From contig NC_043006.1 in the NCBI RefSeq assembly GCF_006345805.1, positions 81,902,001 to 81,966,000 on the forward strand: a stretch of DNA of 64,000 nt, read 5' to 3'. A model generated the notes under the pieces. The model saw only the letters and a list, made by a program, of their open reading frames with translations, had not been told where the DNA came from and searched no databases. Positions 2,783-63,221 of this stretch are shown here, in pieces (the first letter of the stretch is position 1; each line of letters starts with the position of its first letter). The stretch comes from Octopus sinensis. Taxonomy: Eukaryota. A program made the position numbers and the translations under genes.

Positions 2783-3787
2783 CAGGCAATAACAGAGGAA
2801 TTCAAGACAGGATGCCCTTGGGAGCTCCTCTATGCTGATGACCTTGCTCTAATTGCTGAGTCGCTATCAGAACTGGAGGAGAAGTTTCAGGTGTGGAAAC
2901 AAGGATTAGAATCGAAGGGCCTCAGAGTCAATCTAGCTAAAACCAAAGTCGTAATCAGTAGGAAGGTAGACAAATCACAAACACCTTCAGGTAGATGGCC
3001 CTGCTCGATCTGTAGAAAAGGTGTAGGTAGAAACTCTATAAGATGCACCAAGTGTAAGCTATGGACACATAAGAGATGCAGCAATGTCAAAGGAAGGCTA
3101 ACTAGGAAGATGGTTTTTGTATGTGGCAGATGCTCAGGAACAATAAACACTGAAAATGCTCTGAGACCAACTTCCGTCACTTTCCAGGGAGAAAAACTAG
3201 AAATAGTTGATAGTTTCCGTTACCTAGGTGACCAAGTCAGCAGCGGGGGCGGGTGTGCTGAAAGTGTAACTGCTAGAGTAAGAATAGCTTGGGCAAAGTT
3301 CAGAGAGCTCTTACCTCTGCTGGTGACAAAAGGCCTCTCGCACAGAGTGAAAGGCAGACTGTATGATGCGTGTGTACGTACAGCCATGCTACATGGCAGT
3401 GAAACATGGGCCGTGACTGCTGAGGATATGCGTAAGCTCGCTATAAATGAAGCCAGTATGCTCCGATGGATGTGTAATGCCGGTACTCACACTCGGCAGA
3501 GTGTAAGTACCTTGAGAGAAAAGCTGGACCTAAGAAGCATCAGTTGTGGTGTGCAAGAGAGACGTTTGCGCTGGTATGGTCATGTGGCGAGAATGGATGA
3601 AGATAGTTGTGTGAAAAAGTTCCACACCCTAGCGGTTGAGGGAACCTGTGGAAGAGGCAGACCCAGGAAAACCTGGGACGAGGTGGTGAAGCACGACCTT
3701 CGAACTTTAGGTCTCACTGAGGAAATGACTAGAGACCGAGACCTCTGGAAGTGTGCTGTGCGCGAGAAGACCCGGCAGGACAAGTGA
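2783..3787 (+). CDS. RTE reverse transcriptase C-terminal remnant with embedded PHD-like finger (5'-truncated, stop-free)
   Basis: Frame is open from 2783 (QAITEEFKTGCPWELLYADDLALIAES...) to TGA at 3785-3787, extending the listed 2891-3787 ORF; C4HC3 pattern CSIC...CTKC...HKRC...CGRC. Confidence 0.9.
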   Translation, partial: QAITEEFKTGCPWELLYADDLALIAESLSELEEKFQVWKQGLESKGLRVNLAKTKVVISRKVDKSQTPSGRWPCSICRKGVGRNSIRCTKCKLWTHKRCSNVKGRLTRKMVFVCGRCSGTINTENALRPTSVTFQGEKLEIVDSFRYLGDQVSSGGGCAESVTARVRIAWAKFRELLPLLVTKGLSHRVKGRLYDACVRTAMLHGSETWAVTAEDMRKLAINEASMLRWMCNAGTHTRQSVSTLREKLDLRSISCGVQERRLRWYGHVARMDEDSCVKKFHTLAVEGTCGRGRPRKTWDEVVKHDLRTLGLTEEMTRDRDLWKCAVREKTRQDK

Positions 3788-4401
3788 GTCCATAACCCGT
3801 GGCCTTCTACATGGGATGGAGCCAGCCTACGTATGCATACCTTCCCTTCTTGGGACACAAAACTCTACTTGTGAAGACGTGATGAGGCAAGTGAGGATCA
3901 GAATCGAAATCGATCAATGGAAATTGCGGATGTGCTACCAGTGCCGGTGGCATGTCAAAACTCTGCTTGTGAAGACCCGTTGAGGCAAGTGACGATCAGA
4001 ATCGAAATCGATCAATGGAAATCGATCAATGGAAATTGCAGATGTGTTACCAGTGCCGGTGGCATGTAAGAGAACTTTCCGTTTTGCGACCGTTGCCAGC
4101 ACCGCCCCGTTTCGTGTCCGTTGCCAGCCTCGCCTGGCCCTCGTGCCGGTGGCACATAAAAAGCACCATCCGTTCATGGCCGTTTGCCAGCTCTGTCTGG
4201 CACCAGTGCGGGTGGCACGTAAAAAGCACCCACTACACTCACGGAGTGGTTGGCGTTAGGAAGGGCATCCAGCCGTAGAAACACTGCCAGATTTGACTGG
4301 GCCTGATGAAGCCTTCTGGCTTCACAGACCCCAGTAGAACCGTCCAACCCATGCTAGCATGGAAAACGGATGCTAAACGATGATGATGATGATGATGATG
4401 A
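2783..4401 (+). mobile_element. 5'-truncated RTE-clade LINE, copy 1 (ORF remnant, 3' UTR, (GAT)n tail)
   Basis: RT YADD motif, RTE C-terminal motifs (MLHGSETW, RRLRWYGHV, GRGRPRKTW), 3' UTR ending in (GAT)n at 4378-4401; begins inside a (TA)n tract. Confidence 0.95.
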
Positions 4402-4436
4402 TATATACATATATACATATACATATATATATACAC

Positions 4437-6867
4437 TGCGCTAAATGAGGATGCAAAGAGAGAGGTTTGGAGACGCCACTATGAAAGGTTGCTGAATGAG
4501 GAAAATGAATGGGATAAAGAGAGTCTGCCGAATGACGACCCGACAGAGGGACCAGCAATCCGAGTTGACAGTTCCTTAGTAGTTAAGGCAATTACAAGCA
4601 TGAAAACAGGGAAAGCCCCAGGCCCATCAGGAATTACTGCAGAGATGCTCAAAATATCTGGTAGTGTCGGCTATAGCCTAGTCACCCGTATAGTTAACCA
4701 GGTGATACACGAAGGAGTCATACCCAATGACTGTTGTAGCAGCATAATAGTCAACTGCTACAAAGGTAAAGGTGACGCCCTAGATACAAATAACTACAGT
4801 GGTATCAAGCTGCTGGATCAGGTAATAAAGGTTACGAAGAGGGTTATAGCCCAACTAATTAGAGAGAGAGTTAGCTTAGATGAGATGCAGTTTGGGTTCG
4901 TGCCAGGGAAAAGTACTACTGATGCTATATTCCTGGTAAGACAGCTGCAGGAGAAATACCTAGCCAAAGATAAGCTCCTGTACCTGGCTTTTGTTGACAT
5001 GGAGAAAGCCTTCGACAGGGTCCCCCGATCCCTTATCTGGTGGTCAATGAGGAAACTAGGGATAGATGAATGGTTAGTGAGAGCTGTGCGAGCCATGTAC
5101 AGAGACGCTGCTAGTAAGGTGAGGGTTGGCAACGAGTACAGTGAAGAATTCCGGGTAGAGGTTGGGGTCCACCAAGGTTCAGTCCTCAGTCCCCTCCTAT
5201 TCATCATAGTCCTCCAGGCAATAACGGAAGAATTCAAGACAGGATGCCCCTGGGAGCTCCTCTATGCTGATGACCTTGCTCTAATTGCTGAGTCACTATC
5301 AGAACTGGAGGAGAAGTTTCAGGTGTGGAAGCAAGGTTTAGAATCGAAGGGCCTTAGAATCAACCTAGCCAAAACCAAAGTCCTAATAAGTAGGAAGATA
5401 GACCAATCACAAACACCTTCAGGTAGATGGCCCTGCTCGATCTGTAGAAAAGGTGTAGGTAGAAACTCTATAAGGTGCACCAAGTGTAAGCTATGGACAC
5501 ATAAGAGGTGCAGCCTTCAAAGGAAGGCTAACTAGGAAAATAGTTTTTGTCTGTGGCAGATGCTCAGGAGCAATAAACACTGAAAATGTGCAGAGATCAA
5601 CTTCTTCTACGTTCCAGGGAGAAAAACTAGAAGTAGTTGATAGCTTCCGCTACCTAGGTGACCAAGTCAGGTGGGTGTGCTGAAAGTGAAACTGCTAGAG
5701 TAAGAATAGCCTGGGCTAAGTTTAGAGAGCTCTTACCCCTGCTGGTGACAAAAGGCCTCTCGCTCAGAGTAAAAGGCAGACTGTATGATGCATGTGTACG
5801 TACAGCCATGCTACATGGTAGTGAAACATGGGCTGTGACTGCTGAGGATATGCGTAAGCTCGCAAGAAATGAAGCCAGTATGCTCCGATGGATGTGTAAT
5901 GTCAGTGTTCATAATCGACAGAGTGTAAGTACCTTGAGAGAAAAGTTGGACCTAAGAAGCATCAGTTGTGGTGTGCAAGAGAGACGTTTGCGCTGGTATG
6001 GTCATGTGACGAGAATGGCTGAAGATAGTTGTGTGCAAAAGTGCCACACCCTAGCAGTTGAGGGAACCTGTGGAAGAGGTAGACCCAGGAAAACCTGGGA
6101 CGAGGTGGTGAAGCACGACCTTCGAACTTTAGGTCTCACCAAGGAAATGACTAGAGACCGAGACCTATGGAAGTATGCTGTGCGTGAGAAGACCCGGCAG
6201 GACTAGTGAGACCATAACCCGTCGCCTCTACCTGGTATGCAGCCAGTTGACTTATACATACCTTTCCTTCTTGGGACACAAAACTCCACTTGTGGAGACC
6301 CGTTGAGGCAAGTGAAAATCAAAAAATCAAAATATCAAGATCAAAATCAAACCAAATCAAATCAGATATCAGAAAGCAGAACCAAAATCAAAGTCGATCA
6401 ACATCAATGGAAATTGCAGCTGTGATACCAGTGCCGTAACAAGTAAGCGAACCATCCGATCGTGGCCGTTGCCAGCGTCGCCCCGTCTGGCCTCTGTGCC
6501 CGTTGCACGTAAAAAGCACCATCCGTTCGTGGCCGTTGCCAGCCTCGCCTGGCCCCCATGCCGGTAGCACATAAAAGCTCCATCCGTTCGTGGCTGTTGT
6601 CAGCCCCGCCTGGCCCCCGTGCCAGTGGCACATAAAAAACACCATACGTCCGTGGCCGTTTGCCAGCTCCGTCTGGCACCTGTGCGGGTGGCACGTAAAA
6701 AGCACCCACTACACTCACAGAGTCGTTGGCGTTAGGAAGGGCATCCAGCCATAGAAACACTGCCAGATCAGACTGGGCCTGATGCAGCCTTCTGGCTTCA
6801 CAGACCCCAGTTGAACCATCCAACCCATGCTAGCATGGAAAGCGGACGCTAAATGATGATGATGATA
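4437..6867 (+). mobile_element. 5'-truncated RTE-clade LINE, copy 2
   Basis: Same family as copy 1 but longer; 3' UTR with internal ~60-bp repeats and (GAT)n tail ending near 6867. Confidence 0.95.
4438..6208 (+). pseudogene. Frameshifted RTE reverse transcriptase ORF
   Basis: RT motifs QFGFVPGKSTTDAIF, FVDMEKAFDRVP, GVHQGSVLSPLLF, YADD in ORF 4489-5535; frame breaks near 5516 and 5665 relative to copy 1; continues in ORF 5658-6206. Confidence 0.92.
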
Positions 6868-6930
6868 TACATATATATATATATATATACATATACATAC
6901 ATACATGCACACATGCATACATACATACAT

Positions 6931-13117: not shown

Positions 13118-13326
13118 GTAGGAGGTATACTACTAACTTTAGTAGTATACCTATATTGTTAGTCAGAATGAAACTATTAGATGTGGTCTGTTTGGATGCT
13201 GTCAGTTTGGTACAGCTGACTGGATATTCAGTCTGGTTTAGGCAACAAAACATTTTGGTGCTATAGGCAAACACGTATGCACACACACACACACACACAC
13301 AGGCACAGAAATATATACATTCAAGG

Positions 13327-13742
13327 TGACGAGCTAGCAGAAACGTTAGCACGCCAGGCGAAATGCTTAGCACTATTTCGTCTACTGTTACGTTCTGAGT
13401 TCAAATTCCACAGAGGTCAACTTTGCCTTTCATCCTTTCGGGGTCGATAAATTAAGTACCAGTCACGCACTGGGGTCGATGTAAGTGACTTAATCCGTTT
13501 GTCTGTCCTTGTTTGTCCACTCTGTGTTCAGCCCCTTGTGGGTAGTAAAGAAATAGGTATTTCATCTGCCGTTATGTTCTGAGTTCAAATTCCGCCGAGG
13601 TCAACTTTGCCTTTCATCCTTTCGGGGTTGATAAATTAAGTACCAGTTATGTACTGGAGTCGATGTAAGCAACTTAATCCGTTTGTTTGTCCTTCTTTAT
13701 CCCCTCTATGTTTAGCCCCTTGTGGGCAATAAAGAAATAAGA
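13327..13742 (+). mobile_element. Head-to-tail dimer of SINE family B
   Basis: Second, 5'-truncated unit starts at GGTATTTC overlapping the GAAATAGGTATTTC end of the first. Confidence 0.8.
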
Positions 13743-14280
13743 AATATATACATTCAGATAGAGAGAGGGGAGGAGAGAAAGGCAAGAAAGAAAAAGAGAA
13801 AGAAGGAGACAGAGGGGGTAGAAAGAGAAAGAGAGAGAAAGAGCGACATTACTCATACTTACAAACATAACTAGATGTTCACACATAACTTGAGACAGGG
13901 GAGAAGCGAATGAGAGAAACATTACATGTGATGTCAAATAAGTGAGTGTAGAATCAGCAATGCCAAATAGGTGACGCCTACCAAAACGTCTTATACCCAT
14001 TTTAAGTGGTCTTCTGTTAAAAATCCTTATTGATGGCCTCTGGAGAAAGACAGGCAAAACTTCCTGTAATACATCATTCTGTCACTTCCCTGTTTGTTTC
14101 TCGTATTTGGTAGTTGTTCATTTAAATGTGATAGTTTTTTTTTTTTAACTACCTTCCAGTTTTTAGTATGCTGTTTCAAACTTATTTGTTTTTAAGTGTC
14201 TTTAAAATACTTTTTCAATTCTTTTGTTTGGAACATCAAGCATTCAGAAACTTCTTTTATGTCACACTACTTTTTATATG

Positions 14281-25388: not shown

Positions 25389-25865
25389 CTGACAAACAGG
25401 CAGATAGATAAATATTCAGAGAGATTTATAGATTAAATACTTACTGGCACATTGAGTGTTTTGTCTCCATGCTATACCATAAATGAAAAAGCATGATCAG
25501 ATTATCAGCAGTCACGATATGTGTTTTTACAGGAAATTTCTTCATGAAAAGAAAAAAGGGGCCAACCAGACTAGTTTCAGTCCTATGTTGAGAATTCATC
25601 AGCAACTGAGTACCCTCTGTAACTTATCATGAAGACACTGCTTGTAAACAAAACACTCTATTAATGTGCGCTGAAATAAACTGAATAAACCGCTTAGCAT
25701 ATATAGCACATTCTTGGCAGTTAGTCTGACCGATAAATTACTGGTGTGTTAAACAATGCTTTGTTTGAATATATTTATAAATCTTTAGAATATATCTATA
25801 GATTTTTTAAACCAAAACTGTATAAGTGGACAGATGTGAAAATCTGTTTATATCTCTACCATTAA

Positions 25866-25950
25866 GTTGTTTAGCTTAATGGTAGAGCACTCAGTCAGTA
25901 TCTAAGAAGTATAGGTTCAACTCCAGTAGCTGCCTGTTGGCAACTTTTTT
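25866..25950 (+). pseudogene. tRNA-Thr(AGT)-like head of a SINE-like element, copy 1 (element continues to 29158, interrupted by the hammerhead array)
   Basis: A box TAGCTTAATGG, B box GGTTCAACTCC, anticodon loop around AGT, T6 tract at 25945-25950; body shared with copy 2 at 29885. Confidence 0.6.
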
Positions 25951-26206
25951 CCATTTCATAAGGGTAAATACCAAATCTGTCTTTGCTGTTCTTACAGCTT
26001 TACTTTGAAATTTACTTTCTGTAAAATACCAAACATATTCAACACTTACAAAATTTGTTTATAATATATATATATATGTATATCACAATCAAGGAACGGC
26101 CATAATAGGCCATTCACCCACTAGAAATAACAGCCAAAAAGCTTCAACCGCAAAATAACATTAATTCCGTAAACCAGGAGAAAATTAAAAAAACATTTAC
26201 CCTGAA

Positions 26207-26313
26207 ATTCCTTATACGATGCACCGTTTCGTCTACTGTTTAATGGTAAACTAACCTGATTAAATTAAATCAAGCCAATCTACCATAGGCCCTTAGATTC
26301 ATCAGTAAGGAAT
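26207..26313 (-). ncRNA. Type I hammerhead ribozyme (inverted monomer 1)
   Basis: Reverse complement of the motif at 27309-27415. Confidence 0.85.
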
Positions 26314-26697
26314 AGCCAAATCGGAACAGATATTTTTCACGAGGCATTCTCGTCCATGCCTCGCCAATATCTGACCTAAAATTTTCAAATCGTCGCACTC
26401 GCGCCAAATTATCGGCAGCAAATAAATATAAGCCGCCGATTCCATTACGGAACCAACCAGAAAATTCATAATTAATCAATATAGGGAGGCAAAAAAATTT
26501 TGTAGAATTCTTTTGCCCCCAGCGGCCTAGTGGGAAAAAATTAAATAGTCATAAACCATTTTTAAGTTCAATATCACAATCAAGTAACGGCCATAATAGG
26601 CCATTCACCCACTAGAAATAACAGCCAAAAAGCTTCAACCGCAAAATAACATTAATTCCGTAAACCAGGAGAAAATTAAAAAAACATTTACCCTGAA

Positions 26698-26804
26698 ATT
26701 CCTTATACGATGCACCGTTTCGTCTACTGTTTAATGGTAAACTAACCTGATTAAATTAAATCAAGCCAATCTACCATAGGCCCTTAGATTCATCAGTAAG
26801 GAAT
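26698..26804 (-). ncRNA. Type I hammerhead ribozyme (inverted monomer 2)
   Basis: Reverse complement of the motif at 27309-27415. Confidence 0.85.
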
Positions 26805-27308
26805 AGCCAAATCGGAACAGATATTTTTCACGAGGCATTCTCGTCCATGCCTCGCCAATATCTGACCTAAAATTTTCAAATCGTCGCACTCGCGCCAAAT
26901 TTATCGGCAGCAAATAAATATAAGCCGCCGATTCCATTACGGAACCAACCAGAAAATTCATAATTAATCAATATAGGGAGGCAAAAAAATTTTGTAGAAT
27001 TCTTTTGCCCCCAGCGGCCTAGTGGGAAAAAATTAAATAGTCATAAACCATTTTTAAGTTCAATATCAAGGAACGGCCATAATAGGCCATTCACCCACTA
27101 GAAATAACAGCCAAAAGGCTCCCTATATTTTGCCTCCCTATATTGAATAATTATGAATTTTCTGGTTGGTTCCGTAATGGAATCGGCGGCTTATATTTAT
27201 TTGCTGCCGATAAATTGGCGCGAGTGCGACGATTTGAAAATTTTAGGTCAGATATTGGCGAGGCATGGACGAGAATGCCTCGTGAAAAATATCTGTTCCG
27301 ATTTGGCT

Positions 27309-27415
27309 ATTCCTTACTGATGAATCTAAGGGCCTATGGTAGATTGGCTTGATTTAATTTAATCAGGTTAGTTTACCATTAAACAGTAGACGAAACGGTG
27401 CATCGTATAAGGAAT
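27309..27415 (+). ncRNA. Type I hammerhead ribozyme (forward monomer 1); predicted cleavage after GUA at 27407
   Basis: Stem I ATTCCTTA/TAAGGAAT (8 bp), core CTGATGA, stem II (A)TCTA/TAGA(C) capped by a 19-bp hairpin, GAAA, self-complementary stem III ACGGTGCATCGT, A17. Confidence 0.88.
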
Positions 27416-27798
27416 TTCAGGGTAAATGTTTTTTTAATTTTCTCCTGGTTTACAGAATTAATGTTATTTTGCGGTTGAAGCTTTTTGGCTGTTATTTCTA
27501 GTGGGTGAATGGCCTATTATGGCCGTTCCTTGATTGTGATATTGAACTTAAAAATGGTTTATGACTATTTAATTTTTTCCCACTAGGCCGCTAGGAGCAA
27601 AAGAATTCTACAAAATTTTTTTGCCTCCTATATTGATTAATTATGAATTTTCTGGTTGGTTCCGTAATGGAATCGGCGGCTTATATTTATTGCTGCCGAT
27701 AAATTTGGCGCGAGTGCGACGATTTGAAAATTTTAGGTCAGATATTGGCGAGGCATGGACGAGAATGCCTCGTGAAAAATATCTGTTCCGATTTGGCT

Positions 27799-27905
27799 AT
27801 TCCTTACTGATGAATCTAAGGGCCTATGGTAGATTGGCTTGATTTAATTTAATCAGGTTAGTTTACCATTAAACAGTAGACGAAACGGTGCATCGTATAA
27901 GGAAT
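27799..27905 (+). ncRNA. Type I hammerhead ribozyme (forward monomer 2); predicted cleavage after 27897
   Basis: Identical motif to 27309-27415. Confidence 0.88.
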
Positions 27906-28287
27906 TTCAGGTTAAATGTTTTTTTATTTTCTCCTGGTTTACGGAATTAATGTATTTTGCGGTTGAAGCTTTTTGGCTGTTATTTCTAGTGGGTGAATGG
28001 CCTATTATGGCCGTTCCTTGATTGTGATATTGAACTTAAAAATGGTTTATGACTATTTAATTTTTTCCCACTAGGCCGCTGGGGGCAAAAGAATTCTACA
28101 AAATTTTTTTGCCTCCCTATATTGATTAATTATGAATTTTCTGGTTGGTTCCGTAATGGAATCGGCGGCTTATATTTATTTGCTGCCGATAAATTGGCGC
28201 GAGTGCGACGATTTGAAAATTTTAGGTCAGATATTGGCGAGGCATGGACGAGAATGCCTCGTGAAAAATATCTGTTCCGATTTGGCT

Positions 28288-28393
28288 ATTCCTTACTGAT
28301 GAATCTAAGGGCCTATGGTAGATTGGCTTGATTTATTTAATCAGGTTAGTTTACCATTAAACAGTAGACGAAACGGTGCATCGTATAAGGAAT
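28288..28393 (+). ncRNA. Type I hammerhead ribozyme (forward monomer 3); predicted cleavage after 28385
   Basis: Same motif with a 1-nt deletion in the stem II apical loop. Confidence 0.88.
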
Positions 28394-28776
28394 TTCAGGG
28401 TAAATGTTTTTTTAATTTTCTCCTGGTTTACGGAATTAATGTTATTTTGCGGTTGAAGCTTTTTGGCTGTTATTTCTAGTGGGTGAATGGCCTATTATGG
28501 CCGTTCCTTGATTGTGGTATTGAACTTAAAAATGGTTTATGACTATTTAATTTTTTCCCACTAGGCCGCTGGGGGCAAAAGAATTCTACAAAATTTTTTT
28601 GCCTCCCTATATTGATTAATTATGAATTTTCTGGTTGGTCCGTAATGGAATCGGCGGCTTATATTTATTTGCTGCCGATAAATTGGCGCGAGTGCGACGA
28701 TTTGAAAATTTTAGGTCAGATATTGGCGAGGCATGGACGAGAATGCCTCGTGAAAAATATCTGTTCCGATTTGGCT

Positions 28777-28883
28777 ATTCCTTACTGATGAATCTAAGGG
28801 CCTATGGTAGATTGGCTTGATTTAATTTAATCAGGTTAGTTTACCATTAAACAGTAGACGAAACGGTGCATCGTATAAGGAAT
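28777..28883 (+). ncRNA. Type I hammerhead ribozyme (forward monomer 4); predicted cleavage after 28875
   Basis: Identical motif to 27309-27415. Confidence 0.88.
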
Positions 28884-29167
28884 TTCAGGGTAAATGTTTT
28901 TTTAATTTTTTTAATTTTCTCCTGGTTTACGGAATTAATGTTATTTTGCGGTTGAAGCTTTTTGGCTGTTATTTCTAGTGGGTGAATGGCCTATTATGGC
29001 CGTTCCTTGATTGTGATATTGAACTTAAAAATGGTTTATGACTATTTAATTTTTTCCCACTAGGCCGCTGGGGGCAAAAGAATTCTACAAAATTTTTTTG
29101 CCTCCCTATATTGATTAATTATATATATGTATATATATATACACACACATACTTTACTGCCAAAGGT

Positions 29168-29884: not shown

Positions 29885-30507
<623 letters not shown>

Positions 30508-36149: not shown

Positions 36150-36692
36150 ATGTAGACACTGAGCTGTGATTATCATATTCAAGAGACAGCATATACCCTA
36201 CCTGACATTTGTTCTGTCAGCAATTGAGAAATAGCAACAGACAGCCATAAATCTTGATAACAAGCAACCCATGTATTATGTCCACTTTACCTGTATTATG
36301 TTCATTTAACCTATATTATGTCCATCTATACTCCTGTCATCAACTATGTATGTGGTTGTCATCAACAAACACTAAAGCCACTAGTAATATAAATACTCTC
36401 ACCTCTATCAACCACAGTCACTTAGGTGGCTACAACAATTTGTCAGCACTTCAGTTAATTGTCATACAAGGTAATTAATTTCACATGTAGCTATAAACAT
36501 TACAACCCACCATCTGGGCCAACCACCTTGTCTCCCCCCCCTCCTCCAGCCCAGTACATAGGAAAACTGGTTCAGAATTTGTTGTTTGTATAAGAAAATA
36601 TTTATGAGGGATGACATAAATCTCTAGAGAAAAAAAAATTCAAAAAAAAAAGGAAAAATTCTGCAAGAGTGATATTGAGAAAAGCACTATAC

Positions 36693-36892
36693 TCTTTTAC
36701 TTGTTTCAGTCATTTGACTGTGGCCATGCTGGAGCACCGCCTTTAGTTGAGCAAATTGACCCCAGGACTTATTCTTTTTAAGCCTAGTACTTATTCTATC
36801 GGTCTCTTTTGCCGAACCGCTAAGTTACGGGGATGTAAACACACCAGCATCGGTTGTCGAGCGATGTTGTGGGGACAAACACAGATACACAA

Positions 36893-36935
<43 letters not shown>

Positions 36936-37110
36936 CATATATACGATGGGCTTCTTTCAGTTTCCGTCTAAATCCACTCACTACCAAATCCACTCACAAG
37001 GCTTTGGTCAGCCCGAGGCTATAGTAGAAAACACTTGTCCAAGATGCCACGCAGTGGGACTGAACCCAGAACCATGTAGTTGGTAAGCAAGCTACTTACC
37101 ACACAGCCAC
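36693..37110 (-). mobile_element. SINE family A (full length)
   Basis: Reverse complement of 261-665. Confidence 0.85.
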
Positions 37111-37859
37111 TCCTATGCCTATATGGCAACAATCTCTACAGCCTTTAATTGATGTTGCAGTTGTTGTTATTGCTGTTGTGTGAGTTTCAGCAAACTAATA
37201 ATCAAGAAACATTCCAGGAGTAAGAGTTCCCTCACTTTTTTTAAAGGTTTTTTTTCCCCCTGCCCTACCACTGATACTGACTATCAAGAACCACATCGAC
37301 CAATGTGTCCTTTTTCTTAAGATGATAGTGTGTAATTTGAATGTAATTCGGTTGATATTTCTAACAAAATGAGTGACTGAGTGACCATGCCAGAGGCTTT
37401 CTCATAAGCAGAGAAGGCTGGTTGGTATACCAGCTTAAAATAAATACCTTGCCCACACCTGTATTTTGATACAGATCCTTTACATCCTTACTTTAATTAT
37501 TGAGTTGACAATGGCTTAGCATTTCAGGTTGTGGCGGGAGGTAGGGGAGTCAATAAAATGAAGTACCAGTCAAGTACAGGGGTCAGCAAAATATCCTGTT
37601 AGACAAATTTTTGTGCCTACAGAAGACGTTATTATTATTTCATCAGAATGAAGTGAAAGACAGAATTTGTAGTGTTTCACGAAATACTTGGTAGTTGCTC
37701 TTTTGTGACATTCCTACTCTGAGTTCAAAACCTGCTGGGGTTAACTTTACCATTTGTCTTCTAAGGTCACTAAAATCAAAGTAATTGGATCAACACAAGG
37801 AATATTATAATCCCAGCCACAGAATTTTAGGCCTTGTATAAAAATAAATAAATGCGCCC

Positions 37860-45844: not shown

Positions 45845-48800
45845 AACAACAGGTTGATCATGGCTGGAATGCCTTTGATCATAGGTCTAATGCTAGATAG
45901 TAACAAGAACGAGAACAATACCAAGGATGACAACACCAACAATAGCAATAACATCAACAACAGGTTGATCATGGCTGGAATGCCTTTGATCATAGGTCTA
46001 ATGCTAGATAGTAACAAGAACGAGAACAATACCAAGGATGACAACACCAACAATAGCAATAACATCAACAACAGGTTGATCATGGCTGGAATGCCTTTGA
46101 TCATAGGTCTAATGCTAGATAGTAACAAGAACAATACCAAGGATGACAACACCAACAATAGCAATAACATCAACAACAGTTTAATCATGGCTGGAATGCC
46201 TTTGATCATAGGTCTAATGCTAGATAGTAACAAGAACGAGAACAATACCAAGGATGACAACACCAACAATAGCAATAACATCAACAACAGGTTGATCATG
46301 GCTGAAATGCCTTTGATCATAGGTCTAATGCTAGATAGTAACAAGAACGAGAACAATACCAAGGATGACAACACCAACAATAGCAATAACATCAACAACA
46401 GGTTGATCATGGCTGGAATGCCTTTGATCATAGGTCTAATGCTAGATAGTAACAAGAACAATACCAAGGATGACACACCAACAATAGCAATAACATCAAC
46501 AACAGGTTGATCATGGCTGGAATGCCTTTGATCATAGGTCTAATGCTAGATAGTAACAAGAACGAGAACAATACCAAGGATGACAACACCAACAATAGCA
46601 ATAACATCAACAACAGTTTAATCATGGCTGGAATGCCTTTGATCATAGGTCTAATGCTAGATAGTAACAAGAACGAGAACAATACCAAGGATGACAACAC
46701 CAACAATAGCATAACATCAACAACAGGTTGATCATGGCTGGAATGCCTTTGATCATAGGTCTAATGCTAGATAGTAACAAGAACAATACCAAGGATGACA
46801 ACACCAACAATAGCAATAACATCAACAACAGTTAATCATGGCTGGAATGCCTTTGATCATAGGTCTAATGCTAGATAGTAACAAGAACGAGAACAATACC
46901 AAGGATGACACACCAACAATAGCAATAACATCAACACAGGTTGATCATGGCTGAAATGCCTTTGATCATAGGTCTAATGCTAGATAGTAACAAGAACGAG
47001 AACAATACCAAGGATGACAACACCAACAATAGCAATAACATCAACAACAGGTTGATCATGGCTGGAATGCCTTTGATCATAGGTCTAATGCTAGATAGTA
47101 ACAAGAACAATACCAAGGATGACAACACCAACAATAGCAATAACATCAACAACAGGTTGATCATGGCTGGAATGCCTTTGATCATAGGTCTAATGCTAGA
47201 TAGTAACAAGAACGAGAACAATACCAAGGATGACAACACCAACAATAGCAATAACATCAACAACAGTTTAATCATGGCTGGAATGCCTTTGATCATAGGT
47301 CTAATGCTAGATAGTAACAAGAACGAGAACAATACCAAGGATGACAACACCAACAATAGCAATAACATCAACAACAGTTTAATCATGGCTGGAATGCCTT
47401 TGATCATAGGTCTAATGCTAGATAGTAACAAGAACGAGAACAATACCAAGGATGACAACACCAACAATAGCAATAACATCAACAACAGTTTAATCATGGC
47501 TGGAATGCCTTTGATCATAGGTCTAATGCTAGATAGTAACAAGAACGAGAACAATACCAAGGATGACAACACCAACAATAGCAATAACATCAACAACAGG
47601 TTGATCATGGCTGGAATGCCTTTGATCATAGGTCTATGCTAGATAGTAACAAGAACGAGAACAATACCAAGGATGACAACACCAACAATAGCAATAACAT
47701 CAACAACAGTTTAATCATGGCTGGAATGCCTTTGATCATAGGTCTAATGCTAGATAGTAACAAGAACGAGAACAATACCAAGGATGACAACACCAACAAT
47801 AGCAATAACATCAACAACAGTTTAATCATGGCTGGAATGCCTTTGATCATAGGTCTAATGCTAGATAGTAACAAGAACGAGAACAATACCAAGGATGACA
47901 ACACCAACAATAGCAATAACATCAACAACAGGTTGATCATGGCTGGAATGCCTTTGATCATAGGTCTAATGCTAGATAGTAACAAGAACGAGAACAATAC
48001 CAAGGATGACAACACCAACAATAGCAATAACATCAACAACAGGTTGATCATGGCTGGAATGCCTTTGATCATAGGTCTAATGCTAGATAGTAACAAGAAC
48101 GAGAACAATACCAAGGATGACAACACCAACAATAGCAATAACATCAACAACAGGTTGATCATGGCTGAAATGCCTTTGATCATAGGTCTAATGCTAGATA
48201 GTAACAAGAACGAGAACAATACCAAGGATGACAACACAACAATAGCAATAACATCAACAACAGTTTAATCATGGCTGGAATGCCTTTGATCATAGGTCTA
48301 ATGCTAGATAGTAACAGAACGAGAACAATACCAAGGATGACAACACCAACAATAGCAATAACATCAACAACAGTTTAATCATGGCTGGAATGCCTTTGAT
48401 CATAGGTCTAATGCTAGATAGTAACAAGAACGAGAACAATACCAAGGATGACAACACCAACAATAGCAATAACATCAACAACAGGTTGATCATGGCTGGA
48501 ATGCCTTTGATCATAGGTCTAATGCTAGATAGTAACAAGAACGAGAACAATACCAAGGATGACAACACAAACAATAGCAATAACATCAACAACAGGTTGA
48601 TCATGGCTGGAATGCCTTTGATCATAGGTCTAATGCTAGATAGTAACAAGAACGAGAACAATACCAAGGATGACAACACCAACAATAGCAATAACATCAA
48701 CAACAGGTTGATCATGGCTGAAATGCCTTTGATCATAGGTCTAATGCTAGATAGTAACAAGAACGAGAACAATACCAAGGATGACAACACCAACAATAGC

Positions 48801-51475
48801 AATAACATCAACAACAGGTTGATCATGGCTGGAATGCCTTTGATCATAGGTCTAATGCTAGATAGTAACAAGAACGAGAACAATACCAAGGATGACAACA
48901 CCAACAATAGCAATAACATCAACAACAGGTTGATCATGGCTGGAATGCCTTTGATCATAGGTCTAATGCTAGATAGTAACAAGAACGAGAACAATACCAA
49001 GGATGACAACACCAACAATAGCAATAACATCAACAACAGTTTAATCATGGCTGGAATGCCTTTGATCATAGGTCTAATGCTAGATAGTAACAAGAACGAG
49101 AACAATACCAAGGATGACAACACCAACAATAGCAATAACATCAACAACAGGTTGATCATGGCTGAAATGCCTTTGATCATAGGTCTAATGCTAGATAGTA
49201 ACAAGAACGAGAACAATACCAAGGATGACAACACCAACAATAGCAATAACATCAACAACAGGTTGATCATGGCTGAAATGCCTTTGATCATAGGTCTAAT
49301 GCTAGATAGTAACAAGAACGAGAACAATACCAAGATGACAACACCAACAATAGCAATAACATCAACAACAGGTTGATCATGGCTGGAATGCCTTTGATCA
49401 TAGGTCTAATGCTAGATAGTAACAAGAACGAGAACAATACCAAGGATGACAACACCAACAATAGCAATAACATCAACAACAGGTTGATCATGGCTGAAAT
49501 GCCTTTGATCATAGGTCTAATGCTAGATAGTAACAAGAACGAGAACAATACCAAGGATGACAACACCAACAATAGCAATAACATCAACACAGGTTGATCA
49601 TGGCTGAAATGCCTTTGATCATAGGTCTAATGCTAGATAGTAACAAGAACGAGAACAATACCAAGGATGACAACACCAACAATAGCAATAACATCAACAA
49701 CAGGTTGATCATGGCTGGAATGCCTTTGATCATAGGTCTAATGCTAGATAGTAACAAGAACGAGAACAATACCAAGGATGACAACACCAACAATAGCAAT
49801 AACATCAACAACAGGTTGATCATGGCTGGAATGCCTTTGATCATAGGTCTAATGCTAGATAGTAACAAGAACGAGAACAATACCAAGGATGACAACACCA
49901 ACAATAGCAATAACATCAACAACAGGTTGATCATGGCTGAAATGCCTTTGATCATAGGTCTAATGCTAGATAGTAACAAGAACGAGAACAATACCAAGGA
50001 TGACAACACCAACAATAGCAATAACATCAACAACAGGTTGATCATGGCTGAAATGCCTTTGATCATAGGTCTAATGCTAGATAGTAACAAGAACGAGAAC
50101 AATACCAAGGATGACAACACCAACAATAGCAATAACATCAACAACAGGTTGATCATGGCTGGAATGCCTTTGATCATAGGTCTAATGCTAGATAGTAACA
50201 GAACAATACCAAGGATGACAACACCAACAATAGCAATAACATCAACAACAGTTTAATCATGGCTGGAATGCCTTTGATCATAGGTCTAATGCTAGATAGT
50301 AACAAGAACGAGAACAATACCAAGGATGACAACACCAACAATAGCAATAACATCAACAACAGGTTGATCATGGCTGAAATGCCTTTGATCATAGGTCTAA
50401 TGCTAGATAGTAACAAGAACGAGAACAATACCAAGGATGACAACACCAACAATAGCAATAACATCAACAACAGGTTGATCATGGCTGAAATGCCTTTGAT
50501 CATAGGTCTAATGCTAGATAGTAACAAGAACGAGAACAATACCAAGGATGACAACACCAACAATAGCAATAACATCAACAACAGGTTGATCATGGCTGAA
50601 ATGCCTTTGATCATAGGTCTAATGCTAGATAGTAACAAGAACGAGAACAATACCAAGGATGACAACACCAACAATAGCAATAACATCAACAACAGGTTGA
50701 TCATGGCTGAAATGCCTTTGATCATAGGTCTAATGCTAGATAGTAACAAGAACGAGAACAATACCAAGGATGACAACACCAACAATAGCAATAACATCAT
50801 CAACAACAGGTTGATCATGGCTGAAATGCCTTTGATCATAGGTCTAATGCTAGATAGTAACAAGAACGAGAACAATACCAAGGATGACAACACCACAACA
50901 ATAGCAATACACAACAACAGGTTGATCATGGCTGAAATGCCTTTGATCATAGGTCTAATGCTAGATAGTAACAAGAACGAGAACAATACCAAGGATGACA
51001 ACACCAACAATAGCAATAACATCAACAACAGGTTGATCATGGCTGAAATGCCTTTGATCATAGGTCTAATGCTAGATAGTAACAAGAACGAGAACAATAC
51101 CAAGGATGACAACACACCAACAATAGCAATAACATCAACAACAGGTTGATCATGGCTGGAATGCCTTTGATCATAGGTCTAATGCTAGATAGTAACAAGA
51201 ACGAGAACAATACCAAGGATGACAACACCAACAATAGCAATAACATCAACAACAGGTTGATCATGGCTGGAATGCCTTTGATCATAGGTCTAATGCTAGA
51301 TAGTAACAAGAACGAGAACAATACCAAGGATGACAACACCAACAATAGCAATAACATCAACAACAGGTTGATCATGGTTGGAATGCCTTTGATCATAGGT
51401 CTAATGCTAGATAGTAACAAGAACGAGAACAATACCAAGGATGACAACACCAACAATAGCAATAACATCAACAAC
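45845..51475. repeat. 111-bp minisatellite, ~51 copies
   Basis: Unit GGTTGATCATGGCTGGAATGCCTTTGATCATAGGTCTAATGCTAGATAG plus degenerate AAC/AAT triplets; AACAAC microhomology at both ends. Confidence 0.97.
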
Positions 51476-53133: not shown

Positions 53134-53287
53134 ATGATGCTATATCAGGCAGTGAGTTGGTTCATTTCAGAAAGCTGTCACCTCTCACTTGCAATGTATT
53201 CATATTCTGGCTATCTATCCAGCCATCTATCTATCTAACATTAAGAAAAAAAAAGATATATCATAAAACGAAACAAAACTGGTATTG

Positions 53288-53821
53288 GAGTAAAGATTAT
53301 TTGCCAACATAACATGACAGTCCTGGTTTAGGACGAATGTTGCTGTAATTTAGCTCCAGGAGACATCGTCCTAAACCAGGACTGCCATGTTATGTTGGCA
53401 AATAATCTTTACTCCAAAGTACTGTTGTTGAATATCTCTACTTGTGAGATTTACCAATAGTAATTTTCTAATTTATAGATCAGTGACTAGGTGTCACTTT
53501 GAAAACTATATATTTCGAATGGGAATTTAGCAGTGCCACCACTAGCTGAACAATTATTCTGTGCTGATGAAGGGAAATAACCTGGAAATCGCAATACACA
53601 GATATTGTTTTGAGCTAAGTGAGAGTGCTAGATTCCCTTGTTTGAAAATATAAGGACACAGATCATGTTGTATAGCCAGCTGGAGACGATCTCTCTTGGG
53701 GCTAAATTACAGCAAAATCCATTCTAAACTAGGACTACCATGTTATGTTGGCAAATAATCTTTACTCCAAAGTACTGTTGCTGAATATCTCTCATTGTGA
53801 GATTTACAAATAGCAATTTTC
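53288..53821. mobile_element. Second hammerhead-bearing insertion: 5' inverted segment plus ~1.3 copies of a ~353-bp unit
   Basis: Flanked by 14-bp direct repeat CAAAACTGGTATTG (53274-53287, 53822-53835); 53371.. repeats at 53724..; 52-bp inverted repeat 53285-53336/53366-53417. Confidence 0.7.
53558..53602 (+). ncRNA. Minimal type I hammerhead ribozyme (slightly degenerate); predicted cleavage after AUA at 53596
   Basis: Stem I TCTGTG/CACAGA, core CTGATGA, stem II AGG-GAAATAA-CCT(G), GAAA, near-palindromic stem III ATCGCAAT. Confidence 0.65.
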
Positions 53822-62782: not shown

Positions 62783-63152
62783 CTTTTACTTGTTTCAGTC
62801 ATTTGACTGTAGCCATGCTGGAGCACCGCCTTTAGTCGAGCAAATCGACTCCACAACTTATTCTTTGTAAGCCTAGTACTTATTCTATCAGTCTCTTTTG
62901 CTGAACCACTAATGTTATGGGGACATAAACACACCAGCATCGGTTGTCAAGCGATGTTGGGAGAACAAACACAGACACACAAACACACACACATGATGGG
63001 CTTCTTTCAGTTTCCGTTTACCAAATCCATCCACAAGGCTTTAGTCAGCCCGAAGCTATAGTAGAAGACACTTGCCCAAGGTGCTACGCAGTGGGACTGA
63101 ACCCGGAACTATGTAGTTCGTAAGCAAGCTACTTACCACACAGCGACTCCTA
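62783..63152 (-). mobile_element. SINE family A
   Basis: Reverse complement of 261-665. Confidence 0.85.
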
Positions 63153-63221
63153 CACTATTGTATGGTTTCTGTGGTTGCATGGTTTCCTAATACCAACAAC
63201 TTTTCTGAGAGTACTTTGTCT

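What the first reader, a model, noticed from the sequence alone, without database searches (positions are those of the whole stretch)
26084..29120. Tandem ~490-nt monomers each carrying a complete type I hammerhead: candidate cephalopod retrozyme / circular RNA family
Seen: six hammerheads, each with perfect 8-bp stem I (ATTCCTTA/TAAGGAAT), canonical CUGAUGA and GAAA, a GUA cleavage triplet and self-complementary stem III (ACGGTGCATCGT). Predicted cleavage sites are spaced 490, 488 and 490 nt apart, and the monomers are nearly identical. Established: tandem type I hammerhead repeats (newt satellite 2, schistosome Sm-alpha, metazoan non-LTR retrozymes) are transcribed, self-cleave to monomers and can circularise. 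Inference: an active non-coding retroelement. The 68-nt stem II domain and the monomer length look unusual, and I cannot tell from sequence alone whether the family is already described.
Basis: partly seen in the sequence, partly recalled or inferred. Interest (0 to 1): 0.95.

Follow-up and report, generated by a model that had tools for sequence, protein, structure and literature searches.

The report
Octopus hammerhead-ribozyme retrozyme array
A young, non-coding mobile element in an octopus genome is built of ~490-base units that each carry a self-cleaving hammerhead ribozyme; it belongs to the known animal "retrozyme" class, but its insertion scars point to which machinery copies such elements.

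Summary
Six identical 106-107-nt type I hammerhead (HHR) motifs sit in ~490-nt units at 26080-29122.

- Only four units are head-to-tail on the + strand. Two lie in an inverted block on the - strand.
- The 10.1/11.1 position at the base of helix II is an A·C mismatch, not G-C.
- No Rfam hammerhead model detects the motif.

New evidence shows a retro-insertion, not a satellite:
- A 15-nt target-site duplication flanks the array.
- The array splits the (TA)n(CA)n tail of a tRNA-like SINE. An intact paralogous SINE serves as an empty-site model.
- Both blocks have their 3' ends facing outward, and their unit counts are non-integer (2.1 and 4.07).
- This "inverted 5'-truncated copy plus partial tandem" layout is the published hallmark of Penelope-like element insertion.

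The + strand RNA is very structured (z = -8.9) and rich in G·U pairs. A two-unit transcript folds into a double hammerhead through a 12-bp intermolecular helix III.

The host is Octopus or a close relative. A second, unrelated HHR element at 53285-53821 has the same layout.

Verdict: a new cephalopod member of the known non-LTR retrozyme class with an atypical HHR. Cleavage, circular RNA and copy number were not tested.

The parts
25865..26083 (+). tRNA-like SINE copy (tRNA-like head 25865-25935, body, start of its (TA)n tail); this is the target the array inserted into
   Evidence: Rfam tRNA hit, 30.5 bits. It is 91% identical over ~210 nt to the paralogue at 29886-30092. Alignment.
26069..26083 (.). 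Left copy of the 15-nt target-site duplication TATATATATGTATAT; its last 4 nt overlap the element end (microhomology)
   Evidence: Longest common flank string. The intact paralogous SINE tail shows the uninterrupted (TA)n(CA)n.
26080..27113 (-). Inverted block, ~2.1 units with the HHR strand on the - strand. Read on the - strand it starts at unit position ~78 at the central junction and ends at unit position ~138 (…GATTGTGATAT) against the left TSD
26698..26804 (-). Hammerhead motif (helix I 5' strand to helix I 3' strand); predicted cleavage after A17 = 26706
26207..26313 (-). Hammerhead motif; predicted cleavage after A17 = 26215
27114..27127 (.). Head-to-head junction scar: GGCTCCCTATATT, an imperfect 13-nt duplicate of the first bases of the direct block (GCCTCCCTATATT)
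   Evidence: Sequence read. BLAST block ends.
27128..29122 (+). Direct block, 4.07 units. It starts at unit position 212 and ends at unit position 238 (…GATTAATTAT) against the right TSD
27309..27415 (+). Hammerhead motif; cleavage after A17 = 27407
27799..27905 (+). Hammerhead motif; cleavage after A17 = 27897
28288..28393 (+). Hammerhead motif (1-nt deletion in the helix II loop); cleavage after A17 = 28385
28777..28883 (+). Hammerhead motif; cleavage after A17 = 28875
29120..29134 (.). Right copy of the 15-nt TSD TATATATATGTATAT, followed by the rest of the interrupted SINE tail (TA)n(CA)n to ~29150
29886..30125 (+). Intact paralogous SINE copy with an uninterrupted (TA)n(CA)n tail; used as the empty-site model
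   Evidence: Rfam tRNA hit, 38.2 bits..
53285..53821 (+). Separate, unrelated HHR-bearing element with the same architecture, used as corroboration. Inverted block 53285-53370, direct block 53371-53821 (1.28 units of 353 nt), HHR-like motif 53558-53602, 14-nt TSD CAAAACTGGTATTG at 53274-53287 and 53822-53835

Best explanation
This is a recent insertion of a non-autonomous, non-coding retroelement of the metazoan non-LTR retrozyme type in an Octopus genome.

Proposed life cycle:
1. A multimeric + strand transcript forms double hammerheads between neighbouring units. The 12-nt palindrome ACGGUGCAUCGU of one unit pairs with that of the next to make an extended helix III.
2. The transcript cleaves after GUA and releases 488-491-nt monomers.
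3. A host RNA ligase closes the monomers into a highly base-paired circle. The monomeric hammerhead in the circle is nearly inert, because helix III alone is worth only -0.2 kcal/mol.
4. A reverse transcriptase supplied in trans copies the circle round and round.
5. At this locus both 3'-OH ends of a staggered break in a SINE's (TA)n tail primed synthesis on AU-rich stretches of the RNA (twin priming). That gave one 4.07-unit block and one opposed 2.1-unit block, joined head to head and flanked by a 15-nt target-site duplication.
6. The layout is that of Penelope-like element (PLE) insertions, so a PLE is the most likely helper.

Shown: motif, unit structure, TSD, empty-site paralogue, block geometry, predicted folds, host genus.
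Inferred: transcription, self-cleavage, circularisation, rolling-circle reverse transcription, PLE as helper.
For: Motif and unit:
- Six identical HHR motifs have a complete core, an 8-bp helix I and a stable helix II. No other descriptor hit occurs in the window, against 0.02 expected by chance.
- Units are 37% GC.
- The longest ORF is 69 aa, is broken by indels between units, has no homologues and is not on record.

RNA structure:
- The circular + strand MFE is -159 kcal/mol (z = -8.9) against -106 for the - strand. The + fold has 26 G·U pairs of 161, the - fold 5 of 121, which points to the + RNA as the functional strand.
- Only the + polarity carries a ribozyme motif.
- Helix III is worth -0.2 kcal/mol as a hairpin but -17.5 as a 12-bp duplex.
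- The MFE of a two-unit transcript forms the intermolecular helix III (28373-28384 with 28863-28874). It also pairs the upstream helix I 5' strand with the downstream 3' strand.

Insertion:
- A 15-nt TSD is present.
- The flanks re-join into the (TA)n(CA)n tail seen intact in the paralogous SINE.
- Both blocks run seamlessly through the cleavage site. They have non-integer unit numbers and different internal 3' end points, with 3-4 nt of microhomology to the TSD.
- Divergence from consensus is about 0.6%.

Corroboration and literature:
- A second, unrelated HHR element in the window has the same inverted-plus-direct layout and a 14-nt TSD in a non-microsatellite target.
- PLE insertions are described as partial tandems, often with an adjacent inverted 5'-truncated copy, variable TSDs and (TA)n bias (PMC8557442).
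- O. vulgaris has 336 recently active Penelope-like insertions (PMC13282606).
- Published retrozyme features match (PMC7229834). A PLE origin has been proposed (2026 preprint).
Against: - No Rfam hammerhead model scores the motif even at E<=10.
- 10.1/11.1 is an A·C mismatch where G-C is highly conserved, and helix II is 67-68 nt long, so catalytic competence is not assured.
- All six copies stem from one event. There is no covariation and no significant excess conservation of the HHR (1 variant event observed, 3.8 expected).
- No further copy was found in the window or in 142 kb of O. vulgaris. None was found in the viral, metagenome or prokaryote collections either.
- Family status, copy number and expression are therefore unknown.
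- The TSD lies in TA-rich sequence, where a 15-nt match is less improbable than elsewhere.
- No PLE lies in the window. The only reverse transcriptase there is a LINE.
Confidence: 0.75

Rival explanations
1. The unit is not an independent non-autonomous family. It is the pseudo-LTR (or a pLTR-derived remnant) of an octopus Penelope-like element, here present as tandem or solo pLTR copies without the internal ORF.
For: PLE pLTRs carry type I HHRs with palindromic helix III and enlarged helix II, and often an unpaired nucleotide after A9 (PMC4209133). Xenopus retrozymes are sister to PLE pLTRs. The insertion architecture is PLE-like. O. vulgaris has recently active Penelope families.
Against: The array holds six consecutive ~490-nt units with no ORF between them. 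No RT/GIY-YIG ORF lies nearby; the only RT in the window is a LINE 20 kb away. No similarity to any other sequence in the 207 kb examined. This rival largely overlaps the main explanation, since retrozymes may be PLE derivatives.
Confidence: 0.2
2. It is a decayed or never-functional tandem repeat. The hammerhead-like motif no longer cleaves because of the A·C at 10.1/11.1 and the oversized helix II. The array is just a dead insertion or a local duplication.
For: No Rfam HHR hit. The G10.1-C11.1 pair is described as highly conserved (PMC4209133). There is no covariation or significant HHR conservation among the copies, and no other copies were found.
Against: The rest of the core, all three helices and the 12-nt palindrome are intact in all six copies. 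The + strand-specific, G·U-rich structure at z = -8.9 is hard to explain for junk DNA. The axolotl HHR_Amex2 has a U·U mismatch at the base of helix II and still cleaves, better as a dimer (PMC7229834). Three of the four other octopus HHR-like motifs inspected also depart from a plain G10.1-C11.1 pair (A-U, an unpaired A, or A·G), and three have a helix II of 26-53 nt. The insertion is very young at 0.6% divergence, so its template was recently propagated.
Confidence: 0.15
3. It is a retrozyme, but a LINE mobilised it rather than a PLE. One candidate is the LINE that also mobilises the (TA)n-tailed tRNA-like SINEs. L1-style twin priming would explain the inversion.
For: Twin priming is an established LINE-1 phenomenon (general knowledge). 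The window contains a LINE reverse transcriptase. O. vulgaris has 2,533 recently active LINE insertions against 336 PLE insertions. The direct block ends in …TTAT next to (TA)n, like the SINE tail.
Against: [quoted passage not shown] HHRs and tandem organisation link retrozymes to PLEs. Neither block has a poly(A) or a fixed 3' tail.
Confidence: 0.2
4. The inverted block is an assembly artefact (fold-back or chimeric long reads in a repeat). The true locus is a simple head-to-tail array.
For: Complex tandem/inverted PLE-type structures are known to cause assembly problems (PMC8557442). Several differences between units are 1-nt homopolymer indels typical of long-read error.
Against: The arrangement is not a true palindrome. 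The two blocks meet at different unit positions (78 vs 212) with a specific 13-nt scar. The inverted block has private variants, including a 6-nt deletion and substitutions. Its outer end abuts a matching TSD copy. An independent element at 53285-53821 shows the same layout.
Confidence: 0.05

Closest known systems
Metazoan non-LTR retrozymes (Cervera & de la Peña 2020, NAR; e.g. Mytilus galloprovincialis 350-390-nt repeats, Acropora millepora 220-240-nt repeats)
   Same: Head-to-tail units of a few hundred bp, each with one type I HHR on one polarity only. GC below 50%. No ORF, LTR, PBS or PPT. TSD longer than 4 bp. RNA predicted to be highly self-paired. Short arrays of a few units. Found in a mollusc. 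Co-exists with PLEs in the host genus.
   Different: The unit (488-491 nt) is longer than the ~170-400 nt first described, though it falls within the 51-972 bp reported in 2026. Helix II is 67-68 nt instead of ~4 bp plus a loop. There is an A·C at 10.1/11.1. Helix III is a 12-nt palindrome. The locus has an additional inverted block. Expression and circularity were not shown here. Cephalopods are not mentioned in the retrozyme papers I could search.
Newt satellite 2 / axolotl retrozymes Rtz331 and Rtz353 (HHR_Amex1/2)
   Same: Type I HHR with a helix III too weak to act alone and a palindromic loop, so cleavage is efficient only as a double hammerhead in multimeric transcripts. HHR_Amex2 also has a mismatch (U·U) at the base of helix II.
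   Different: Vertebrate host. 330-350-nt units, about 126,000 HHR motifs in the genome. Short helix II with the conserved loop1-loop2 contacts. No sequence similarity.
pDo500 satellite of Dolichopoda cave crickets
   Same: About 500-bp tandem unit carrying a hammerhead that is proposed to act as a double hammerhead. Changes at G10.1/C11.1 occur in that family.
   Different: A true satellite (~5% of the genome) in long arrays. Compact 49-nt HHR. Insect host. No TSD-bounded short insertions have been described.
Penelope-like element pLTR hammerheads (Cervera & de la Peña 2014; Lünse et al. 2017) and PLE insertion architecture (Craig et al. 2021)
   Same: Type I HHR with enlarged helix II, an A directly after A9, and a palindromic helix III that works as a dimer. 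Insertions are partial tandems with an adjacent inverted 5'-truncated copy, a variable TSD and a (TA)n target.
   Different: No RT/GIY-YIG ORF. The unit is repeated six times. PLE min-HHRs keep G10.1-C11.1 and usually lack a helix III loop. Helix II here is far longer than the 6-8 bp of PLE min-HHRs.
Schistosoma Sm-alpha SINE-like elements
   Same: Short non-coding retroelement in an invertebrate carrying an active type I HHR.
   Different: Sm-alpha has a canonical compact HHR with loop-loop contacts. This description of Sm-alpha rests on general knowledge and was not tested here.
Plant LTR retrozymes and Avsunviroidae / viroid-like satellite RNAs
   Same: HHR-processed small circular RNAs. 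For retrozymes, reverse transcription of a circle gives more than one unit of cDNA.
   Different: Plant retrozymes use type III HHRs, LTRs, PBS, PPT and 4-bp TSDs. Viroids carry ribozymes in both polarities and have no DNA stage. Here there is one polarity only and a genomic insertion with a TSD.

Membership tests
Hammerhead ribozyme, type I | Conserved core C3-U4-G5-A6-N7-G8-A9, G12-A13-A14, A15.1-U16.1 pair, H17 (not G) at the cleavage site | tested here: met
   CUGAUGA … GAAA … U-A (GUA triplet) in all six copies.
Hammerhead ribozyme, type I | Three helices around the core, with helix I open-ended (5' strand before CUGAUGA, 3' strand after the cleavage site) | tested here: met
   Helix I is 8 bp. 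Helix II is UCUA/UAGA, an internal loop, then a 19-bp distal stem. Helix III is ACG/CGU (+G·U). See the constrained fold, the descriptor and the dimer fold.
Hammerhead ribozyme, type I | G10.1-C11.1 pair closing helix II (highly conserved, not absolute) | tested here: not met
   A10.1·C11.1 in all copies. No register shift restores a pair.
Hammerhead ribozyme, type I | Recognised by curated covariance models (Rfam hammerhead families) | tested here: not met
   No hammerhead hit at gathering score or at E<=10, even on a 126-nt stretch. The other octopus HHR-like motifs were also missed.
Hammerhead ribozyme, type I | [quoted passage not shown] | not testable with these tools
   Needs in vitro transcription of monomer and dimer constructs.
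Hammerhead ribozyme, type I | Loop 1 - loop 2 tertiary contact between helices I and II | tested here: inconclusive
   Candidate internal loops exist: UUCA 8 bp up helix I, and AGGGCCU/UAAACAG after 4 bp of helix II. No 3D or covariation test was possible.
Metazoan non-LTR retrozyme | Head-to-tail repeats of a few hundred bp, each with a type I HHR on one polarity | tested here: met
   4.07 units direct and 2.1 units inverted, period 488-491. No ribozyme motif on the other polarity.
Metazoan non-LTR retrozyme | Low GC (<50%), non-coding, no LTR/PBS/PPT | tested here: met
   GC is 37%. The longest ORF is 69 aa, is frame-broken between units and has no homologues. The element is a pure tandem repeat. 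PBS and PPT motifs were not searched for specifically.
Metazoan non-LTR retrozyme | Insertion flanked by a TSD longer than 4 bp | tested here: met
   15-nt TATATATATGTATAT on both sides. The paralogous SINE gives the empty site. Caveat: the target is TA-rich.
Metazoan non-LTR retrozyme | RNA predicted to be stable and highly self-paired | tested here: met
   Circular MFE -159 kcal/mol, z = -8.9, 66% of bases paired.
Metazoan non-LTR retrozyme | Dispersed multi-copy family in the genome | tested here: inconclusive
   No other copy in the 64-kb window or in 142 kb of O. vulgaris. A whole cephalopod genome could not be searched.
Metazoan non-LTR retrozyme | Expressed as linear and circular monomeric RNA | not testable with these tools
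   No RNA-seq access.
Metazoan non-LTR retrozyme | Co-occurrence with PLEs in the host genome | tested here: met
   By literature only: O. vulgaris has 31 recently active Penelope-like families and 336 insertions (PMC13282606). No PLE is present in the window itself.
Autonomous Penelope-like element | ORF encoding RT plus GIY-YIG endonuclease between pLTRs | tested here: not met
   No ORF longer than 73 aa in the array. The window's RT ORFs are RVT_1/PHD LINE fragments at 2891-6206.
Viroid-like / symmetric rolling-circle RNA replicon | Self-cleaving ribozymes in both polarities; no genomic DNA copy | tested here: not met
   Only one polarity has a ribozyme motif. The element is integrated with a TSD.

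The most novel reading that the evidence does not exclude
Two linked readings are not excluded by my evidence.

1. The two TSD-bounded 'inverted 5'-truncated block plus more than one direct unit' insertions in this window may be fresh footprints of Penelope-type target-primed reverse transcription. Twin priming on a circular RNA template would explain them. That would be locus-level structural evidence for which machinery mobilises animal retrozymes, a point the retrozyme literature calls undeducible from the sequence repeats themselves.

2. Octopus hammerheads may form a distinct structural subclass. Most of the motifs show an A directly after A9 that is unpaired or mismatched at 10.1/11.1, a helix II of 26-68 nt and an 8-12-nt palindromic helix III. 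Current Rfam models miss this subclass, and it may be abundant: 5 extra motifs in 207 kb against 0.2 expected.
Probability: 0.4. Interest if true: 0.65.

Novelty: new member of a known kind. Interest (0 to 1): 0.5.

Why it matters
- Retrozymes are a recently recognised route to abundant circular RNAs in animals. Their helper retrotransposon is still argued from co-occurrence and sequence similarity.
- A very young insertion has intact junctions, a paralogous empty site and a PLE-style inverted-plus-tandem layout. It offers concrete, checkable evidence on how these elements integrate.
- The finding would extend retrozymes to cephalopods. The recent detailed O. vulgaris repeat annotation does not mention ribozymes.
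- It shows that standard covariance models miss this type of hammerhead, so HHR elements may be under-counted in such genomes.
- It is not a new kind of system. The class, the dimeric-hammerhead logic and the PLE link are all published.

Tried and rejected
- **Rfam cmscan.** I ran it at gathering score and at E<=10 on the window, the array, a 126-nt HHR stretch, the second motif and the O. vulgaris loci. There were no hammerhead hits. The only significant hits were two tRNA-like SINE heads and mir-9 in L005. Weak hits (mir-297, RalA, snoRNAs, mir-154, ES056) are noise.
- **Exact or degenerate pattern scans** of viral contigs, metagenome contigs (22, 31) and prokaryote genomes (30) found nothing. 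One 22-mer hit (L001, 56% GC) was chance, with no extended similarity.
- **Using the 69-aa ORF as a handle** to find copies among predicted proteins gave no homologue and no record.
- **Host identification through the LINE RT** was uninformative, with best hits at 55-81% identity in mixed invertebrates. The SINE-derived ORF worked instead.
- **Seven O. vulgaris loci** (142 kb) hold no copy of the 490-nt unit.
- **Compact PLE-type min-HHR search** (short helix II closed by G-C) found none in 207 kb. Searches had scanned only L002 because of the file layout. This was corrected.
- **Excess conservation of the HHR among the six copies** was not significant (1 event observed, 3.8 expected).
- **Register shift** treating the A after A9 as a bulge, to rescue a 10.1-11.1 pair, does not work for this motif.
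- **Pol III A/B boxes** in the unit, checked by eye, gave no convincing match. Read-through from the upstream SINE promoter is unlikely because a T6 run follows the tRNA-like head and the first block is antisense.
- **The supplement of the O. vulgaris repeat paper** holds no sequence library.


Full report
**1. The observation**

The stretch 26080-29122 consists of ~490-nt repeats. TRF reports period 491 x 2.1 copies at 26080-27120 and period 490 x 4.1 copies at 27128-29122, both at 98% matches.

An exact search finds six copies of ATTCCTTA-CTGATGA-(67/68 nt)-GAAA-CGGTGCATCGTA-TAAGGAAT. Four are on the + strand, with A17 of the GUA triplet at 27407, 27897, 28385 and 28875. The other two are on the - strand, with A17 at 26706 and 26215, spaced 491 nt.

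A hand-written hammerhead descriptor tests for the core, helix I >=5 bp, helix II >=3 bp and helix III >=3 bp. It finds only these six motifs in the 64-kb window on either strand. Simulated windows give 0.02 hits. The six copies count as one independent event, but that event is not chance.

**2. Anatomy of the ribozyme**

| Feature | Finding |
|---|---|
| Core | Canonical: C3-U4-G5-A6-U7-G8-A9, G12-A13-A14, A15.1-U16.1, cleavage triplet GUA |
| Helix I | Perfect 8 bp |
| Helix II | An A10.1·C11.1 mismatch, then UCUA/UAGA, then a 7x7 internal loop, then a 19-bp distal stem with five G·U pairs and a 6-nt loop. It spans 67-68 nt in all and contributes -26.3 kcal/mol |
| Helix III | ACG/CGU plus a G·U closing a UGCA loop |

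As a hairpin helix III is worth only -0.2 kcal/mol. The 12-nt segment is self-complementary, and two copies form a 12-bp duplex of -17.5 kcal/mol.

When a two-unit transcript (28280-28895) is folded without constraints, the minimum-energy structure is a double hammerhead. Segment 28373-28384 pairs with 28863-28874. The helix I 5' strand of the upstream unit pairs with the 3' strand that follows the downstream cleavage site. The upstream CUGAUGA stays unpaired.

This is the dimeric mode described for newt, axolotl, avocado sunblotch viroid and PLE hammerheads (PMC4209133; PMC7229834). It implies cleavage in multimers and protection of the monomeric circle.

Departures from the canonical motif:
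- The A·C at 10.1/11.1 is a real departure, because G10.1-C11.1 is called highly conserved. There is precedent for tolerance. The axolotl HHR_Amex2 has a U·U mismatch at the base of helix II and still cleaves, better as a dimer.
- No Rfam 15 hammerhead model reports the motif. This holds at gathering score, at E<=10 on 3.4 kb and at E<=10 on 126 nt.

Identification as a hammerhead therefore rests on the descriptor, not on a curated model.

**3. The unit as an RNA**

- The 490-nt unit is 37% GC.
- As a circle, the + polarity folds to -159 kcal/mol. Dinucleotide shuffles give -114 ± 5, so z = -8.9. The complement reaches only -106 kcal/mol.
- The + fold has 26 G·U pairs among 161. The - fold has 5 among 121. 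G·U pairs become A·C mismatches in the complement, so this asymmetry says the structure exists at the RNA level, in the strand that carries the hammerhead.
- Helix I continues into the body of the molecule, as in published retrozyme circles.
- The unit does not appear to encode a protein. The longest ORF is 69 aa, and indels between units break or shift it. It has no homologue among 5.8 billion protein clusters and no gene record.
- No ribozyme motif is found on the - polarity.

**4. Evidence that this is an insertion, and how it was made**

A 15-nt string, TATATATATGTATAT, occurs at 26069-26083 and at 29120-29134, directly outside and slightly overlapping the two ends of the array.

The sequence to the left of the array (25865-26083) is a ~210-nt tRNA-like SINE. 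A 91%-identical paralogue lies at 29886-30092 (tRNA-like heads). In the paralogue the SINE ends in an uninterrupted (TA)n(CA)n tail. At the array, the left flank supplies the start of that tail and the right flank supplies the rest, …TATATATATACACACACA. The array has therefore split a SINE tail, and the paralogue serves as an empty-site model.

In unit coordinates, numbered from the cleavage site:

| Block | Starts at unit position | Ends at unit position | Units |
|---|---|---|---|
| Direct | 212 | 238 (…GATTAATTAT) | 4.07 |
| Inverted (read on its own strand) | ~78 | ~138 (…GATTGTGATAT) | 2.1 |

Other features of the junctions:
- Both 3' ends face outward and abut a TSD copy, with 3-4 nt of TA microhomology.
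- Both 5' ends meet in the middle, at a 13-nt scar that imperfectly duplicates the start of the direct block.
- Both blocks pass through the cleavage/ligation site without any scar.
- Neither block has a poly(A) or a fixed 3' terminus.

The simplest reading follows. A staggered break 15 nt apart left two self-complementary (TA)n 3' overhangs. Each annealed to an AU-rich stretch of the RNA and primed reverse transcription (twin priming). The template was a circle or an uncleaved multimer, because synthesis ran through the unit boundary several times. This step is inference.

The units differ from their consensus at 18 events in 3,018 nt (0.6%). Ten of these are indels, mostly single bases in short nucleotide runs, and may be sequencing errors. 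The insertion is therefore very young.

**5. A replicate in the same window**

A more relaxed descriptor, run on the window plus 142 kb of Octopus vulgaris DNA, gives five extra motifs against 0.2 expected.

One lies in the window at 53558-53602:
- Sequence UCUGUG-CUGAUGA-A-GGG-AAAUAA-CCU-G-GAAA-UCGCAAU-A|CACAGA.
- It sits in a 353-nt unit (53371-53723) that is unrelated in sequence to the 490-nt unit.
- That element has a direct block of 1.28 units (53371-53821). An inverted block (53285-53370) that copies unit positions 315-353 plus 1-49 precedes it.
- A 14-nt TSD, CAAAACTGGTATTG, flanks it at 53274-53287 and 53822-53835. The target is not a microsatellite, so this TSD is unambiguous.

Fragments of this family ending at the same unit position occur in two O. 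vulgaris loci.

The O. vulgaris motifs also fit the pattern:
- They have 8-12-nt palindromic helix III segments.
- Their helix II spans 26-53 nt.
- In two of the three with such a palindrome, an A directly follows A9.
- Two of them sit between 52-56-nt inverted arms flanked by TA repeats.

The unusual features of the hammerhead under study, and the inverted-plus-direct layout, are therefore recurrent in this genome rather than accidents of one locus. None of the motifs tested is seen by Rfam.

**6. Host**

- An ORF read through a dispersed repeat (6404-6823, - strand) hits eight database proteins. Seven are "Hypothetical predicted protein [Octopus vulgaris]".
- Seven 20-kb O. vulgaris loci fetched through those proteins share 358 BLAST HSPs of about 85-90% identity with the window.
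- The window therefore comes from Octopus or a very close relative. The species cannot be determined.
- The LINE reverse transcriptase in the window was not informative.

**7. Comparison with what is known**

The element matches the published definition of metazoan non-LTR retrozymes. That definition covers short tandem repeats with a type I HHR, GC below 50% and no LTR/PBS/PPT. It also covers TSDs longer than 4 bp and highly self-paired RNAs. A mussel example has 350-390-bp units (PMC7229834; review PMC7761336).

The monomer length is not exceptional. A 2026 preprint reports consensus lengths of 51-972 bp and at most seven units for 75% of families. The cave-cricket pDo500 hammerhead satellite is about 500 bp.

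The review states that the retrozyme repeats themselves show no motif from which to deduce the helper element. The NAR paper and the 2026 preprint argue for PLEs from co-occurrence and pLTR similarity.

The insertion layout found here is an inverted 5'-truncated copy next to a partial tandem, with a variable TSD and a (TA)n target. It matches the description of PLE insertions, which the authors single out as distinguishing PLE TPRT from that of LINEs (PMC8557442).

O. vulgaris has 31 recently active Penelope-like families. The same repeat-annotation paper contains no mention of ribozyme, retrozyme or hammerhead. The only papers with both "hammerhead ribozyme" and "octopus" do not describe such elements. 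I found no prior description for cephalopods, but I cannot search Repbase, Dfam or subscription journals.

**8. Limits**

- I could not find a second copy of the 490-nt unit in the window or in the O. vulgaris sample. None turned up in the viral, metagenome or prokaryote collections either.
- All six units descend from one event. There is no covariation evidence, and the lower variation in the HHR (1 event against 3.8 expected) is not significant.
- Transcription, cleavage, circularisation and the identity of the helper are inferences.

**9. Verdict**

The sequence feature is real and is not due to chance. It is best explained as a young insertion of a hammerhead-bearing non-LTR retrozyme in an octopus genome, made by PLE-like twin-primed reverse transcription.

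It is a new member of a known class. Two aspects are worth following up: an atypical hammerhead that escapes curated models, and unusually legible insertion scars.

Noticed in passing
window 53274-53835: A second, unrelated hammerhead-bearing element. The unit is 353 nt (53371-53723). The direct block spans 1.28 units and is preceded by an 86-nt inverted block. A 14-nt TSD, CAAAACTGGTATTG, flanks it. The HHR-like motif at 53558-53602 has A·G at 10.1/11.1, a 2-bp helix III and a CGCA loop. Rfam does not detect it.
   Followed up: partly
L004:4436-4744 (O. vulgaris OX597840.1) and L002:8963-9203 (OX597836.1): Two ~240-310-nt elements with 52-56-nt terminal inverted repeats, flanked by TA repeats. 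Each carries a central HHR-like motif with a palindromic helix III (CUGAUCAG, or CAUAUG with a GUC site) and a long helix II (33 and 53 nt). They could be twin-primed HHR insertions or MITE-like hairpins; this is undecided.
   Followed up: partly
L002:20311-20359 (- strand): An HHR-like motif with a 6-bp helix I, an A10.1-U11.1 pair, a 26-nt helix II and the 12-nt palindromic helix III AUCGGGUCCGAU. It lies 146 nt from the end of the fetched locus, apparently in an intron of a myotubularin-related gene, so its context could not be seen.
   Followed up: no
window 25865-26083 and 29886-30125 (also 30084-30486): Two copies (91% identical) of a ~210-240-nt tRNA-derived SINE with a (TA)n(CA)n tail. 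A (TA)~205 microsatellite follows the second copy. The first copy is the target of the retrozyme insertion.
   Followed up: partly
window 45845-51475: A 111-bp minisatellite with 51 copies at 97% identity. Because 111 = 37 codons, long ORFs stay open on both strands (repeat peptides such as …MAGMPLIIGLMLDSNKNENNTKDDNTNNSNNINNRLI…). It shows strong AT skew (0.32-0.36).
   Followed up: no
window 2891-6206: Two partial tandem copies of a LINE. There is an RVT_1 reverse transcriptase ORF at 4489-5535. PHD-finger/C-terminal ORFs lie at 2891-3787 and 5658-6206. The best database relatives are 55-81% identical and come from mixed marine invertebrates, plus a mislabelled 'Herbaspirillum MAG' contig.
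   Followed up: partly
window 26080-29122: A transcript crossing the head-to-head junction would fold into a ~1-kb near-perfect dsRNA hairpin (arms 99-100% complementary). That is a plausible substrate for small-RNA or ADAR pathways. Four of the eight substitutions that separate units from the consensus are A/G changes on the + strand.
   Followed up: no
L005:7027-7103: A mir-9/mir-79 precursor (62 bits, above the gathering score) in the O. vulgaris locus fetched for comparison.
   Followed up: no
window 295-660, 6400-6870, 13320-13745, 36690-37130, 62775-63160 and others: Many copies of ~400-nt dispersed repeats (SINE-like; ORF artefacts contain the motif …FLWLDALPN…). They are shared at about 85-90% identity with O. 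vulgaris, and they are what identified the host.
   Followed up: partly
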